Source: Ruditapes philippinarum
Taxonomy: Eukaryota
Direction: 5' to 3'
Assembly (NCBI RefSeq): GCF_026571515.1
Contig: NW_026865541.1
Location: 124,001 to 188,000, forward strand
Length of the DNA stretch: 64,000 bases
Shown one piece after another: positions 16,373-49,540 of this stretch. The notes beneath the pieces are model-generated. The model saw nothing but the letters and a program-made list of their open reading frames with translations, had not been told where the DNA came from and ran no database searches. The position numbers and the translations under genes were made by a program. Each line of letters begins with the position of its first letter. Position 1 is the first letter of the stretch.

Positions 16373-18369
16373 TTTCCACGTTTCATTTTTCCCCTTGTTT
16401 ACTAGTGAAATCTCCTATTTGAAGAGTTCCAGAAACAGCCCCAAATAATGAAAACTACAATGAAGAATTTTGTTTGAAATTCATTCTTTGAACATCAATC
16501 ACAGTTGATTTATTTTTCAAGTTTAAATATTTCAACAACAAAATAAAGCTTTTACCTGTTAATCTAATTTATTCTTAGTAATTTTTTATAAAAGTTGCTT
16601 TGATGAAAGTTGCAACTTTTATTATTATTATTATTATTATTACAACATTTCAACATTACACGATTTCAGACACTTTGCAGTTAATTGGACAAAAATGTCC
16701 CAGAAATATAGAATGTCAATAGCTCTGTTATAATTTATCATGTAAAGGTTTATTTTATCGTCTGCAATGTCAGTTTTTAAAATATTTTTTCAAACACATT
16801 ACCAAAATAGGGGTTGAGCCACTGATATATAAACATATTTAGCTCCATGGTTGAGCGAATTTACCTAAATGAAAAGAAGGTTTCTGTGAGGGTGAATTTC
16901 ATAACCGGAGGATTTAAATTTCTTTTGTGTAAATGGCTTGGATAGTGGGTTAAATAGTCTGTATAATCGTTCCAGGTCTATGACGTTAACATTTAATCTT
17001 ATCTTCTTTGATTCCTCTTTTAAACAATCCTTATAAACTTCTTGCAATTCTTGTTAGGCCTTTGCTATTTTGGGAGATTTATAGTTAGATAGGTAAAGTA
17101 ACTCTTCTGTTCTGGCATCTAAATAAACATAATAATGACTTAAGTCTTCTGCTACAATAAATTTAAATTTCATAAAATATTTATATGTAATATCAATTTT
17201 GAAAGAGAAAATAGGCCTGCAGTCAGTAGCAAGGTTCTTATCACACCAAGGCCCGGACAAATTTCAATAAATTGATTTTTTTCTTTATGCTTTTCTGTCA
17301 GCCTTTTGTAATTTTAGTATACAATGTATAGCTGTAAATACTGCAGATAATTTTAAAAATCATGTAAATGTGAATTACTTGTATTTTACTATGTAAAAAG
17401 CATGGGACAGCGGTGTTTTTTTTTTATTTAAATAAGTTTCGCATAATACTGTGTGTAGAGCGACTATACAGAGTTTGTAGATAACATCTTTAAGGTTAAA
17501 GATTGATGTTGAACTGACTTTCTGCATCTTAACAGAAGTAATTTTCTTGCACTGGATTAGCCGTATAGTTAATTCCTCATACGGCATAAAATAATACAAA
17601 AAATATATATATATAATAACAGACGACTGTTTTGTTTAGATTTTTTCTTTAATAATTTATAAGTTAATATAATACAAAACACAACAGATGTTAGCACTGT
17701 GACAAGATTACAAATGCACTGCACATCACCAGGTACTGTATGTGTCAAACAGGAAAAGGAACCTGAAAGTAAAAAAAAAATAATAATAAAGAAATTATCA
17801 GTTGTTTTCTCTCGAAGGATATTTTTTTCAGAATATAATAAATACGGATGTTATGTTGCTTAGACACCGAATATAAGTTACGTTCGTTATTTAAAGAGTA
17901 ATATAGTATGACAGGCTGAAAACCCTGAGTGAACTTGTCGAACCTCCATTAAAATAAACATATCATTTTCATAATTTCATAATGAATATGTTTGTCAGGG
18001 ATCAGTTTAGCACCTGGTCAGATTACAAGGTTCGTAGTAGGAAGGAATTGTATTACATGTATTTATCCTGCTCATATGTTAAAAATATAAAAGCAAAAAC
18101 AAATTATCTTTACAAATCTTGTAAATTGTAATGTAGTATTCAAACGTTTTCTCGTCTCCTTAGCATTCTTCAGCATGTCTCCATTTTTTTGTTAAAGCCT
18201 TAGAATTTAGTTCATTTTTCGGATGCATAAATTATGTGATCCTAAAAGATTTAGTGAAATTTGTAAAAAAAAAAGTTTCTTGAAATGTGATTAATATTGA
18301 TTAAATTATAACTTCTATTGTAACATTTTAATACTTACATATCACAGAATAATATTGGCAAAGTTTAGT

Positions 18370-19075
18370 TTATTTTCCAGAAACTGTTGAGTTGAGGAGA
18401 ATAATCTGGTCTTGGTTGGCGTTGGTGTTGAACAATTGTGGGAGAAGGAACAACAAGAAGAACAGGGGCACTGAAATTTTTAAGAAAGAAAGAACATGCT
18501 ATAAAATGTTTGTAATTGGCTATAACCAAGTAAGTTAACACCTTTACTTCGAGATAAAAGACAAATATTGAAAACGGTAATCAAATTAAACAAATTATCA
18601 ATGTATTAGTGGTGCAATAAAAAATCAATATTTAAAAAAAAAAACTTAAAAACACCATATTCTTGATTAGTGCATATAGTTACTTACAGATGGACATTCC
18701 AAGACCTCCGGCGGCCTTTGGTGCTGCTGGGACTGGAATGTATGCAGCCTGTGCCATTACTTTGCCGTAGCTAGATCCGTAGCTAGAACCGTAACCAGAG
18801 CCGTATCCAGCACCGTATCCACTGCCCATACTAGCACCGTAGCTAGGACCGTATCCACCGCCGATACCTCCGCTGATATGTCCGATACCGCCAACTGAAC
18901 CACCGCCAAATGAAGCGCCACCGAACGATGCACCGCCGAATCCGTCATCATTTCCCCATCCGTTGTCATCATTTCCCCATCCATTGTTGTTGTTCCAGTT
19001 ATTGAATCTGTCGTCGGCGAAAACCATTCCGACGACGGCGGTCAAAACGACGGTGACGAAAATTGTGATCTTCAT
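18370..19075 (-). CDS. Gly/Tyr/Asn-rich secretory-pathway structural protein, paralog 1 (162 aa; shell/periostracum matrix-like, family unassigned)
   Basis: Coding exons 19075-18688 (388 nt) and 18470-18370, phase-1 GT-AG intron. Non-coding exon 1 ~19672-19637 below a TATTTAA box; probable 3'UTR exon from 17762. Signal peptide MKITIFVTVVLTAVVGMVFA; C-terminus LPLFFLLFLLPQLFNTNANQDQIILLNSTVSGK*. Confidence 0.9.
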
Positions 19076-19636
19076 GGTTAGGGTTCTGAAATTTTACAAA
19101 ATTTAAAATTTAGATAATTTTTTATCAAATGAACATGATATTACCAAATTATCATACAGAAAGAACAGAACCCAAGTTAGACAGACAACATAATAAGAAA
19201 AGCGGCGCGCATTGGTACAGGTTCAATGTGCAACAATGTTGAATATATTGATATATATTGAGTTGAATATATGCTTTTTACTTCACTCTTGTCGGTAATA
19301 AAGAACGAAAACTGGTATTAAAACTCAAATCAATTTCTCAAAAATATATCTATCTTTTCATCAGTCAGAAGGAAATTTAAAGTCATTGCTTATACTCCTT
19401 TCTATGGAATTACATGTTTATCAAAATCTAACAAAAACAAACAAAAATATATATATTTTTAAACGACAATAAAATTTAGAATAAATGTAAATGCTGAAAA
19501 AAATATAAAAAAAATATCCTTTTCCAACCATTATATTACAAATAAATTCGTATATAGAAATCAACAAAATGAATAAGATGTTGTTTCTAAATATGACTTT
19601 ATTAATGAAAATACTTTAATTATGCACACTACTTAC

Positions 19637-19800
19637 GATGTTTTTGGCTTGACGTTCTTTGGCAGAAGTAATTTTAACACGGCATGTTCGAGCTTAAATA
19701 GTGAAAATTAACGTCGAACTTAAATCGACGTAACGTAACGTACCCGAAGCTTTCAGACAGCCGGACGTAGCGATATAACGATTACATCGTGTTGACAGAT
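19637..19800 (-). promoter_or_regulatory. Promoter and non-coding exon 1 of paralog 1 (type A)
   Basis: TATTTAA at 19700-19694, about 25 nt above an Inr-like ATTACT; donor GTAAGT. Plus-strand blocks CGTAACGTAAC, CAGACARCCGGA and TTGACAG are shared with paralog 2. Confidence 0.7.
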
Positions 19801-48205: not shown

Positions 48206-48947
48206 TTATTTTCCAGAAACTGTTGAGTTGATGAGAACAATCTGGTCTTGGTTGGCGTTGGTGTTGAACAATTGTGGGAGAAGGAACAACAAGAAGAACA
48301 GGGGCACTGAAATTGTCAAAAGTAATATGTATATGTTGCGTACTTGTACTTACATGTTTAAATTACTAGTAAAAATCATAGATATGTTAATACATGGCTA
48401 TGTGCGTTACTCAAAAAAGTGCCATGATGGCGGAATTCTGCGCAGAGAAGTAAATTGCATGCTTCAAAATTTTGAAACGGAACGTAATTAAGATTTTAAA
48501 AGAAGTGCATGCACATATATTTATTGAACAATAATTCTATCGTAATTATGAAGACTTACAGATGGACATGCCAAGACCTCCAGCGGCCTTTGGTGCAGCT
48601 GGAACTGGAATGTATGCAGCCTGTGCCATTCCTTTGCCGTAGCTAGATCCGTAGCTAGATCCGTAGCCCATACCGTATCCAGCACCGTATCCACTGCCGT
48701 ATCCAGCACCGTAGCTTGGACCGTATCCACCGCCGATACCTCCGCTGATATGTCCGATACCGCCAAGTGAAGCACCGCCAAATGAAGCGCCACCGAACGA
48801 TGCACCGCCGAACCCGTCATCATTTCCCCATCCGTTGTTGTCATTTCCCCATCCGTTGTTGTTGTTCCAGTTATTGAATCTTTCGTCGGCAAAGACCATT
48901 CCGACGACGGCGGTCAAAGCGACGGTGACGAAAATTGTAATCTTCAT
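48206..48947 (-). CDS. Gly/Tyr/Asn-rich structural protein, paralog 5 (162 aa)
   Basis: Coding exons 48947-48560 and 48306-48206. 5'UTR exon ~49393-49358. 3'UTR exon from 47726 with AATAAA at 47600-47595. Confidence 0.9.
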
Positions 48948-49357
48948 ATTTATTCTGAAAATTAAAAATGATATTGATATATCTAAATATTTTTGTTGTA
49001 TACATGTAAAAAAGAGCGCTTTTGAGGCATAATATTCGTTTAATATTTTACTAGATAAAATGACAATTCTGTCATTTTAATGACAATATGATAGTTTCAA
49101 CTGCATTTGAATTTTTATTATATAAAAGAAAGCATTTTTTAAACGCAATTATTGATTATGTAACCTATCATATACAGTGTACTGATTTTCAAGGGAAAAA
49201 TCTTTTGAATTAAATACGAAATACTATTTAGAAAAGCTAAGTGGATGTTAATGTATTTAGTCAAAATTTCATTAACATTTTTTCTGTCTCTAATTTTTTT
49301 CAATGAATTTATGAAGAATTTTTTAAAATGTGAAAATATTAATATAAAAGTACTTAC

Positions 49358-49540
49358 GATGTTTTTAGTTTGACTATCTGGAGCAGATGTGATTTTGATT
49401 TGAGTTGTTTCAATTTTTATAGCTGATACATGATGTATCTCGTGTTCCGGAAGTGATATAACAGTCTACCCATACCCTTCACATATCCGGACATGGTGGA
49501 TGGTTACAGCATAATTTGTTGTGTATTGACAGAGTTACAC
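49358..49540 (-). promoter_or_regulatory. Promoter and non-coding exon 1 of paralog 5 (type B)
   Basis: TATAAAAA 49421-49414; CCGGAAGTGATATAACAGTCTACCC from 49447; also keeps the CCGGA and TTGACAG (49526-49532) boxes of type A. Confidence 0.7.

What the first reader, a model, noticed from the sequence alone, without database searches (positions are those of the whole stretch)
17630..49540. Five-gene array of Cys-free block-copolymer proteins with aromatic residues ordered W, F, Y
Seen: each paralog encodes a signal peptide followed by sharply separated blocks. These are acidic Asn/Trp (DDRFNNWNNNNGWGNDDNGWGNDD), Phe (GFGGASFGGASFGG), eight Tyr tetrapeptides (GGYG-PSYG-AGYG-SGYG...), an Ala/Pro linker (AQAAYIPVPAAPKAAGG), a Leu/Phe block and a polar tail. 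Established: Gly-Tyr repeats typify shematrins, prismalin-14 and prisilkin-39, and Gly-Asn/Asp tracts occur in nacrein and pearlin/N16; however, the basic RKKKY-type end of shematrins is absent. Inference: a dosage-amplified, possibly uncharacterised matrix protein family (shell, periostracum, ligament or adhesive) that combines a mineral-binding acidic head, a Tyr cross-linking or phase-separating core and a hydrophobic anchor.
Basis: partly seen in the sequence, partly recalled or inferred. Interest (0 to 1): 0.85.

Follow-up and report, generated by a model that had tools for sequence, protein, structure and literature searches.

The report
Clam Gly/Tyr-rich secreted protein gene array
Five neighbouring Manila clam genes encode almost identical small, unstructured, cysteine-free secreted proteins with separate Trp, Phe and Tyr blocks and a conserved membrane-anchor-like tail. 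The family is real, very strongly expressed in some samples, confined to a few clam lineages and unstudied; it is most likely a building block of an extracellular structure.

Summary
The window is from Ruditapes philippinarum. It carries five co-oriented minus-strand paralogs of 161-162 aa. Each has the described blocks: signal peptide, Asn/Asp/Trp head, Gly-Phe block, 7-8 xGYG tetrapeptides, AYIPVPAAPK linker, Leu/Phe block and polar tail. The last two blocks lie on a second coding exon behind a phase-1 GT-AG intron. RNA contigs confirm that intron and a second intron 10 nt after the stop codon. In one 2015 study summed exon depth is about 10^5, against 4-20 in the introns. My models are identical to five uncharacterised RefSeq proteins.

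The assembly gap at 38707-38848 is intergenic. Relatives occur only in Imparidentia bivalves (Mercenaria, Mactra, Mya, Dreissena) and in plankton metatranscriptomes. There is no Pfam domain, no shematrin hit and no paper. The C-terminal exon is the best conserved part. Coding exons are 94-97% identical, while most introns cannot be aligned.

A matrix role (shell, periostracum, ligament) is plausible but untested, because the expressing tissue is hidden by coded run names. The head's mineral binding and the Tyr cross-linking are conjecture. The scan noted this C-terminal exon before on this same window (s1-804702), and several other tandem Gly-rich families elsewhere in this genome. I class it as a new variant of a known kind, of moderate interest.

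The parts
18370..19075 (-). Gene 1 coding region (= RefSeq LOC132729477, 162 aa): exon A 19075-18688, intron 18687-18471, exon B 18470-18370 including the stop codon.
   Evidence: The spliced translation is identical to P0036.
28196..28949 (-). Gene 2 coding region (= LOC132729475, 161 aa, ends -SG): exon A 28949-28562, exon B 28293-28196.
   Evidence: Identical to P0034.
35008..35741 (-). Gene 3 coding region (= RefSeq 'keratin-associated protein 6-2-like', 162 aa): exon A 35741-35354, exon B 35108-35008.
   Evidence: Identical to P0033.
40706..41412 (-). Gene 4 coding region (= LOC132729478, 162 aa): exon A 41412-41025, intron 41024-40807, exon B 40806-40706 including the stop codon.
   Evidence: Identical to P0001. 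The intron is confirmed by RNA contigs that skip 218 nt with CT..AC ends on the + strand.
48206..48947 (-). Gene 5 coding region (= LOC132729476, 162 aa): exon A 48947-48560, exon B 48306-48206.
   Evidence: Identical to P0037.
39890..40705 (-). Gene 4 3' UTR: 10 nt after the stop codon, then intron 40695-40080, then a 3' UTR exon 40079 to about 39890 that carries AATAAA.
   Evidence: RNA contigs join 40079/40081 to 40696. The GTAAGT donor 10-12 nt after the stop is conserved in genes 2-5 (31 nt after the stop in gene 1). Matching 3' UTR exons lie at 34177-34353 (gene 3) and 47593-47698 (gene 5).
41985..42092 (-). Gene 4 predicted promoter and non-coding first exon: conserved 18-mer at 42092-42075, TATAAAA at 42047-42041, and a roughly 30-nt exon ending at 41985 before GTAAGT. 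The acceptor lies 7 nt before the ATG.
   Evidence: RNA depth stops at about 41424. The exon itself lay outside the stretch on which reads were laid, so it is an inference.
36422..36529 (-). Gene 3 predicted promoter and 5' UTR exon (same 18-mer at 36529-36512; TATAAAA starts at 36484).
   Evidence: Inference by homology to gene 4.
49358..49466 (-). Gene 5 predicted promoter and 5' UTR exon (same 18-mer at 49466-49449; TATAAAA starts at 49421).
   Evidence: Inference.
19637..19700 (-). Gene 1 predicted TATTTAAG box (19700-19693) and 5' UTR exon ending at 19637 before GTAAGT. This is the second promoter type, shared with gene 2.
   Evidence: Read from the sequence. Inference.
29201..29262 (-). 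Gene 2 predicted TATTTAAA box (29262-29255) and 5' UTR exon ending at 29201 before GTAAGC.
   Evidence: Read from the sequence. Inference.
38707..38848 (.). Assembly gap. It is intergenic, between the gene 3 promoter and the gene 4 polyadenylation region.

Best explanation
Proposal: the array encodes a lineage-restricted (Imparidentia bivalve) family of small, acidic, cysteine-free, intrinsically disordered proteins of the secretory pathway. A specialised secretory cell type produces them in bulk as precursors of an extracellular structural matrix. The most probable destination is periostracum, shell organic framework or ligament.

Inferred mechanism:
- The signal peptide is cut after VFA.
- The exposed region of about 105 aa carries separate blocks with different chemistry. 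These are an Asn/Asp/Trp head (cation or polysaccharide contact), Gly-Phe and Gly-Tyr repeats (aromatic stickers for self-association), and Tyr as substrate for tyrosinase or peroxidase cross-linking.
- The conserved last exon (a 15-17-residue Leu/Phe helix plus the tail D-x-I-x-L-x-N-x-T-x-x-G) holds the monomer at the membrane of the secreting cell, or directs its sorting or assembly, before it is built in.
- Five copies with homogenised exons supply dosage.

Shown: the genes, their splicing, very abundant mRNA, the conservation pattern and the predicted disorder. Inferred: the tissue, the matrix role, the cross-linking and the anchoring.
For: Genes and transcripts:
- Five intact paralogs with canonical splice sites.
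- Spliced RNA with summed exon word depth of 1-1.9e5 against 4-20 in introns in run X1. Depth is about 66 in X5, and only a few partial reads appear in two 2026 RNA runs. Expression is therefore strong but restricted.

Protein properties:
- Typical signal peptide; mature pI 4.5; 25% Gly; 9 Tyr; no Cys.
- AlphaFold gives mean pLDDT 49, with helices only at the signal peptide and at 129-143.

Family:
- The architecture is conserved in Mercenaria, Mactra, Mya and Dreissena, and in two Tara plankton metatranscriptome sequences. That fits larval expression.
- Across the family the repeats vary in number while the C-terminal exon stays invariant at D150, I152, L154, N156, T158 and G161.
- Two divergent paralogs elsewhere in the genome keep the phase-1 intron, the hydrophobic exon, N-x-T and the terminal Gly.

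Selection: dN/dS is about 0.3 and dS 0.08-0.15, while most introns are unalignable. The exons are therefore under constraint or undergoing gene conversion.

Precedent: Gly/Tyr-rich low-complexity proteins are among the most specific and most highly expressed mantle genes in Dreissena and Pinctada (PMC9210306; PMC8217771).
Against: - The tissue is unknown, because run and sample names are coded.
- No shell, periostracum or ligament proteome could be checked for these proteins. The Venerupis shell proteome paper is not held. The family's motifs are absent from the text of the Dreissena byssus paper and from the supplements of the Dreissena genome paper.
- The Dreissena mantle 'shematrin-like' genes are basic, unlike this acidic family.
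- A hydrophobic stretch of TM strength is unusual in a protein that ends up in an extracellular matrix.
- Gly is only 25% of the mature protein, well below classic framework proteins.
Confidence: 0.45

Rival explanations
1. Resident single-pass (type I) membrane proteins. The Leu/Phe helix is a true stop-transfer anchor and the 17-22-residue tail is cytosolic. Its D-x-x-x-L-[LIV] acts as an acidic dileucine sorting signal for adaptor complexes. The Gly/aromatic region would then form a surface coat, or line the lumen of a granule or lysosome-related organelle, and would not be deposited in a matrix.
For: - The best 19-aa Kyte-Doolittle window scores 1.8-2.4 in all members, above the usual 1.6 mark.
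- A helix at 129-143 is predicted.
- DQIILL, DQILLI, DQIVLI and DNIILL fit [DE]xxxL[LI] and begin about 7 residues after the helix.
Against: - Most members have no basic residue after the helix, so the positive-inside rule is not met.
- The helix is short (15-17 residues) and contains Pro, Gly or Gln.
- Mya has L-V at the dileucine position.
- The divergent paralog L021 has lost D-x-x-x-L-L but keeps N-x-T and the terminal Gly. Those are lumenal signals.
- The alternating invariant positions (D, I, L, N, T) look more like one face of a beta-strand than a dileucine signal.
Confidence: 0.2
2. Secreted glycine-rich host-defence peptides, comparable to ctenidins, acanthoscurrins, holotricin-3 or the nematode NLP/CNC YGGYG peptides. 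In this reading they are made in bulk by haemocytes or epithelia from a tandem cluster and amidated at the C-terminus.
For: - NCBI's automatic names for the Dreissena members are 'holotricin-3-like' and 'ctenidin-3-like'.
- Every member ends in Gly, Gly-Lys or Gly-Gly-Lys, the classic amidation signal.
- The genes form a tandem cluster with sample-restricted, very high expression.
Against: - The mature protein is anionic (pI 4.5) and Gly is only 25%.
- There are no dibasic processing sites.
- The strongly hydrophobic 15-mer and the acidic head are not features of those peptides.
- The automatic names reflect composition only. The Pfam SGP match is below its cut-off (20-21.6 against 26.7 bits).
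Confidence: 0.1
3. A structural secretion unrelated to shell, such as an egg or embryo envelope, juvenile byssus or adhesive, or a siphon or gut lining. The protein design would be the same but the material different.
For: - Two relatives come from open-ocean plankton metatranscriptomes, so from eggs, embryos or larvae.
- Very high expression is seen in only a few studies.
- From general knowledge: Gly/Tyr/Asn-rich proteins also occur in byssal threads (TMP-1) and in trematode eggshells.
Against: - The family's motifs are not found in the text of the Dreissena byssal protein paper.
- The family is present in clams whose adults lack a byssus.
- There is no direct evidence for or against this reading.
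Confidence: 0.15

Closest known systems
Shematrins, KRMPs, prismalin-14 and prisilkin-39 (Pinctada Gly/Tyr-rich shell framework proteins)
   Same: Signal peptide, small size, Gly-Tyr repeats, multigene family, and very high expression in a secretory tissue (for shematrins, the mantle edge).
   Different: No sequence relationship was found by profile searches. This family is acidic rather than basic and has no RKKKY or Lys-rich end. Its aromatic residues are segregated into blocks. It carries a conserved hydrophobic helix plus a D.I.L.N.T..G tail on a separate exon. Its taxonomic range is Imparidentia, not Pteriomorphia.
Dreissena polymorpha 'shematrin-like' G(n)Y mantle genes (PMC9210306)
   Same: Heterodont bivalve, G(n)Y repeat arrays, and they cannot be aligned to Pinctada shematrins either.
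   Different: Those six proteins are described as basic. Motifs of the Dreissena members of this family were not found in that paper's supplements.
Nematode cuticle collagens (transient membrane anchor, Tyr cross-linking) - analogy from general knowledge
   Same: An apical matrix precursor with a hydrophobic membrane segment that is thought to hold it at the secreting cell before release. The matrix is cross-linked through Tyr.
   Different: The anchor in collagens is N-terminal and release is by furin-type cleavage at RxxR. This family has no collagen repeats and no such site. Mercenaria P0002 gives only a chance-level match to Col_cuticle_N (E 0.14).
Glycine-rich antimicrobial peptides (ctenidin, holotricin-3) and mammalian high-Gly/Tyr keratin-associated proteins
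   Same: Similar composition, which is the source of the automatic database names, and a C-terminal Gly or Gly-Lys.
   Different: Those peptides are cationic and much richer in Gly, and the KAPs are intracellular. None has the acidic head or the hydrophobic C-terminal exon.
Abductin (scallop hinge ligament)
   Same: GGFGGMGGG-like strings occur in the Mya member and GFGGASFGG in Ruditapes. Abductin is also a small secreted protein of a bivalve elastic structure.
   Different: This comparison rests on memory of the abductin repeat. No abductin sequence was available to align. The Ruditapes mature protein has only 3 Met and a dominant Tyr block.

Membership tests
Shematrin | Detectable sequence similarity to shematrins | tested here: not met
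   Profile searches of 1.8 and 5.8 billion proteins returned only unnamed or automatically named heterodont proteins, and no shematrin.
Shematrin | Basic protein with an RKKKY-type C-terminus | tested here: not met
   The mature pI is 4.5 and the C-terminus is ...NSTVSG(K).
Shematrin | Mantle-edge expression and presence in the prismatic shell layer | not testable with these tools
   Run and sample names are coded and no proteome data could be reached.
Sulphur globule protein (Pfam PF17228) | Score at or above the Pfam gathering threshold | tested here: not met
   20.0 and 21.6 bits against a cut-off of 26.7. The match is compositional.
Glycine-rich antimicrobial peptides (ctenidin / holotricin-3 type) | Cationic mature peptide with Gly above about 50% | tested here: not met
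   pI 4.5; Gly is 35 of 142 residues.
Glycine-rich antimicrobial peptides (ctenidin / holotricin-3 type) | C-terminal amidation signal (Gly or Gly-Lys/Arg) | tested here: met
   All full-length members end in G, GK or GGK. This is sequence-level evidence only.
Type I membrane protein with acidic dileucine signal | Cleavable signal peptide plus one hydrophobic segment of TM strength | tested here: met
   Kyte-Doolittle 1.8-2.4 over 19 aa and a predicted helix at 129-143. The segment is short, at 15-17 residues.
Type I membrane protein with acidic dileucine signal | [DE]xxxL[LI] conserved in the tail, with basic residues after the TM segment | tested here: inconclusive
   The motif is present in most members, is L-V in Mya, and is lost in paralog L021. 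Flanking basic residues are mostly absent.
GPI-anchored protein | The hydrophobic signal lies at the very C-terminus, after small omega residues | tested here: not met
   Small residues (AAGG, GGSGSSG) do precede the helix, but 13-22 polar residues follow it. No GPI predictor was available.
Abductin | Tandem GGFGGMGGGX decapeptides and Met-rich composition | not tested
   No reference sequence was available in the tools. The composition differs (3 Met).

The most novel reading that the evidence does not exclude
The conserved last exon would be a previously undescribed assembly or anchoring module of bivalve matrix proteins. It consists of a short helix with helix-breaking residues followed by D-x-I-x-L-x-N-x-T-x-x-G(K). 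It would tether Tyr-rich disordered monomers transiently to the apical membrane of the secreting epithelium. The tail would act as a glycosylated, possibly amidated beta-strand docking element. The matrix (for example the periostracal pellicle) would then be templated at the cell surface and released by cleavage within or next to the membrane. This would be a molluscan counterpart of the transient anchoring of nematode cuticle collagens.
Probability: 0.15. Interest if true: 0.7.

Novelty: new variant of a known kind. Interest (0 to 1): 0.45.

Why it matters
Heterodont clams are poorly covered by shell and periostracum protein work, and their framework proteins are largely unknown. This family is small, abundant and easy to express. 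It has chemically separate blocks and a conserved C-terminal module of a kind not reported for mollusc matrix proteins in the papers I could search. If it is a matrix precursor, it would give a concrete handle on how insoluble Tyr-rich sheets are assembled at a cell surface, and a simple template for biomimetic block polymers. If it is not, it is still one of the most strongly transcribed unknown genes of an aquaculture species. The array is also a clear case of sequence homogenisation limited to exons.

Tried and rejected
- Pfam scan: only sub-threshold compositional matches (SGP, LPXTG anchor, Col_cuticle_N).
- ESM Atlas: only unnamed clusters at 0.82-0.86, and no usable named cluster.
- Search with the C-terminal 44 aa of the Mya protein alone: only the two Mya proteins came back.
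- Literature: searches for tail and linker motifs, LOC numbers and automatic names gave nothing relevant. I read shell proteome, Tridacna, Dreissena genome and byssus papers and a single-cell larval shell paper, and found no matching protein. The Venerupis shell proteome paper is not held.
The species of the ENA-derived relatives and synteny in other clams therefore could not be checked.
- Complex prediction with four copies of residues 108-162: no verdict (score 0.01). This is not evidence either way.
- A 12-mer resembling exon 2 on the + strand at 46192 has no protein-level match and is chance.
- GPI anchoring is rejected as the simple reading, because a long polar tail follows the hydrophobic stretch.
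- The tissue of the high-expression runs could not be decoded.
Exon A was searched by reference. Later full-length queries were database proteins that proved identical to the spliced models. Exons were joined only inside local scripts for translation and dN/dS.
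Full report
**What is there**

The window belongs to the Manila clam Ruditapes philippinarum. On the minus strand there are five paralogs with ATGs at 19075, 28949, 35741, 41412 and 48947.
- Each has a 388-nt first coding exon that ends in a phase-1 donor (..ATC T|GTAAGT).
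- An intron of 217-268 nt follows, then a second coding exon that begins TG after CAG.
- The products are 162 aa (161 in gene 2). They are identical to five RefSeq predictions: LOC132729477, -475, 'keratin-associated protein 6-2-like', -478 and -476.
- tblastn finds exactly five copies of each exon in the window. A six-frame search of the 1.4-Gb assembly finds no other close copy.

- a signal peptide, MKITIFVTVALTAVVGMVFA
- an Asn/Asp/Trp head
- a GFGGASFGGASFGG block
- xGYG tetrapeptides with Tyr at every fourth residue from 75 to 103 (eight in genes 4 and 5, seven in genes 1-3)
- the linker AQAAYIPVPAAPKAAGG
- on the second exon, LPLFFLLFLLPQLF and NTSANQDQIILLNSTVSG(K)

There is no Cys. The mature protein is 14.2 kDa with pI 4.5. 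The aromatic residues are segregated well beyond chance: 4 runs, a value reached by 2e-4 of shuffles.

**The gap**

The N run at 38707-38848 lies between the gene 3 promoter (TATA at 36484) and the gene 4 3' end (about 39890). It touches no exon. Whether it hides more sequence is unknown. I did not try to fill it.

**Transcription and gene structure**

I laid reads on 39500-41800.
- Contigs of run X1 skip 40807-41024 with GT..AG ends on the minus strand, which confirms the coding intron.
- They also skip 40080-40695. This is a second intron that starts 10 nt after the stop codon.
- Its GTAAGT donor is conserved 10-12 nt after the stop in genes 2-5, and lies 31 nt after it in gene 1.
- Summed word depth over exons is 1-1.9e5, against 15 and 4-20 over the two introns. 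X1 is therefore RNA, and the spliced mRNA is extremely abundant there.
- Depth in X5 is about 66. Two 2026 RNA-seq runs, read at 4-6%, give only a few, mostly partial reads.

Expression is thus strong but restricted to certain samples. Their tissue is hidden by coded names.

Coverage stops about 10 nt upstream of the ATG, where all copies have a CAG/AAG acceptor. Upstream of each gene there is a TATA-type box, followed about 63 nt later by a GTAAG donor. Genes 3-5 share an identical 18-mer and TATAAAA, while genes 1-2 share a TATTTAA type. This non-coding first exon is an inference, because it lay outside the stretch I laid.

**Evolution of the array**

Coding sequences differ at only 18-34 of 489 nt (dS 0.08-0.15; dN/dS 0.14-0.59, mostly about 0.3). 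Introns are 41-56% identical, which means unalignable, except for genes 1 and 3 at 96%. Between most pairs similarity stops within about 20 nt of the exon edges. Genes 3 and 4 share flanks at about 80-90%. The mosaic pattern points to old duplicates whose exons are kept alike by gene conversion, by strong constraint, or by both.

**The family**

- Exon A, searched by reference, and then profiles built from database proteins, find relatives only in Mercenaria mercenaria, Mactra antiquata, Mya arenaria (three genes) and Dreissena polymorpha (two loci). Further hits are two Tara plankton metatranscriptome sequences and a few unnamed ENA/Logan/JGI proteins. All named hosts are Imparidentia bivalves.
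- Their database names are automatic and compositional: 'sulfur globule protein CV1-like', 'holotricin-3-like' and 'ctenidin-3-like'. Pfam SGP scores 20-21.6 bits against a cut-off of 26.7.
- Several database entries end in ...CK/RK plus junk. They read into the intron, which shows that the intron position is conserved.
- All members share this order: signal peptide, an N/D-plus-aromatic head (Trp or Phe), Gly-aromatic repeats with Tyr last, (A)Y[IV]P[VL]P, a small-residue stretch, a 15-17-residue hydrophobic helix, and a polar tail.
- Repeat number varies freely. The tail is invariant at D150, I152, L154, N156, T158 and G161, that is at every second position.
- Two divergent paralogs elsewhere in the clam genome (L016 on contig C487, L021 on C6752) keep the phase-1 intron and the CAG|TG start of the hydrophobic exon. 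L021 has lost D-x-I-x-L but keeps N-F-T and the terminal Gly.
- AlphaFold2 on the family alignment predicts disorder (mean pLDDT 49). The only helices are the signal peptide and residues 129-143.

**What it most likely is**

Five properties fit a bulk structural secretion: entry into the secretory pathway, disorder, composition-constrained repeats, extreme sample-restricted mRNA abundance and multi-copy dosage. Mollusc mantles are known to express Gly/Tyr-rich low-complexity proteins in just this way (PMC9210306; PMC8217771). I therefore favour a matrix precursor (periostracum, shell framework or ligament) at about 0.45.

The head's cation or chitin binding and the Tyr cross-linking are inferences from composition.

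The C-terminal exon is the truly distinctive part, and its role is unresolved.
- Hydropathy (1.8-2.4 over 19 aa) predicts a membrane anchor, and the tail fits an acidic dileucine signal.
- The most persistent features, however, are an N-x-T sequon and a terminal Gly or Gly-Lys. These are lumenal signals.
- The alternating invariants suggest a beta-strand face.
- A classical GPI signal is unlikely, because 13-22 polar residues follow the helix.
- A homo-oligomer prediction gave no verdict.

**Rivals**

- A resident type I membrane protein (0.2).
- Another structural secretion, such as an egg or larval envelope or an adhesive (0.15).
- A glycine-rich defence peptide (0.1). The acidic pI and modest Gly content argue against this one.

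**Comparison with known families**

It is not a shematrin: there is no similarity, it is acidic, and it has no basic end. It is not an SGP and not a ctenidin-type peptide. It works most like the Gly/Tyr framework proteins of pearl oysters, with an added C-terminal module that I found described nowhere.

Other notes of this scan list several further tandem Gly-rich secreted families in the same genome, so the general kind is common in this clam. Note s1-804702 had already flagged the C-terminal exon on this window.

**Limits**

- The Venerupis shell proteome paper is not held.

Noticed in passing
window 5708-16372 (-): A multi-exon QSOX-type sulfhydryl oxidase gene lies just downstream of gene 1. 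Its first exon has a signal peptide and a thioredoxin CGHC motif (16025-16372). An exon carries YPCGMW (6644-6985). The last exon has an Erv1/Alr domain (Pfam E 1.4e-12) and a C-terminal hydrophobic segment (5708-6589). A functional link to the Cys-free array is unlikely.
   Followed up: partly
L016 (G000:C487:348765-351989) 1513-2291 (+); L021 (G000:C6752:30196-33363) 1653-827 (-): Two short, divergent family members (about 100 and 88 aa) without the Asn/Trp head. They have the same phase-1 intron before the hydrophobic exon. L021 ends ...NSNNGISNFTING: it keeps N-x-T and the terminal Gly but not the D-x-I-x-L motif.
   Followed up: partly
window 39444-39836, also 34044-34133 and 42427-42476: A 109-bp tandem repeat (3.6 copies, 93% matches) lies just beyond the gene 4 3' end, with related copies near gene 3 and upstream of gene 4. 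Partial RNA reads from two 2026 runs land on it, so it belongs to a dispersed transcribed repeat family.
   Followed up: no
window 52723-53642 and 53643-54252: A 27/54-bp AT-rich satellite (about 35 copies) runs straight into a second assembly gap of 610 N.
   Followed up: no
window 21863-22512 and 37184-37708: Two tandem arrays. One has a 55-bp unit (11.8 copies) and lies directly beside the palindromic transposon noted earlier at 20680-21846. The other is GC-rich with a 37/127-bp unit and lies upstream of gene 3; it explains the local GC peak.
   Followed up: no
protein P0035 (JGI sample, 1078-nt contig): A near-identical copy of gene 4 exon A with one Tyr tetrapeptide fewer and Q-to-K in the linker. 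This suggests repeat-number polymorphism among clams.
   Followed up: no
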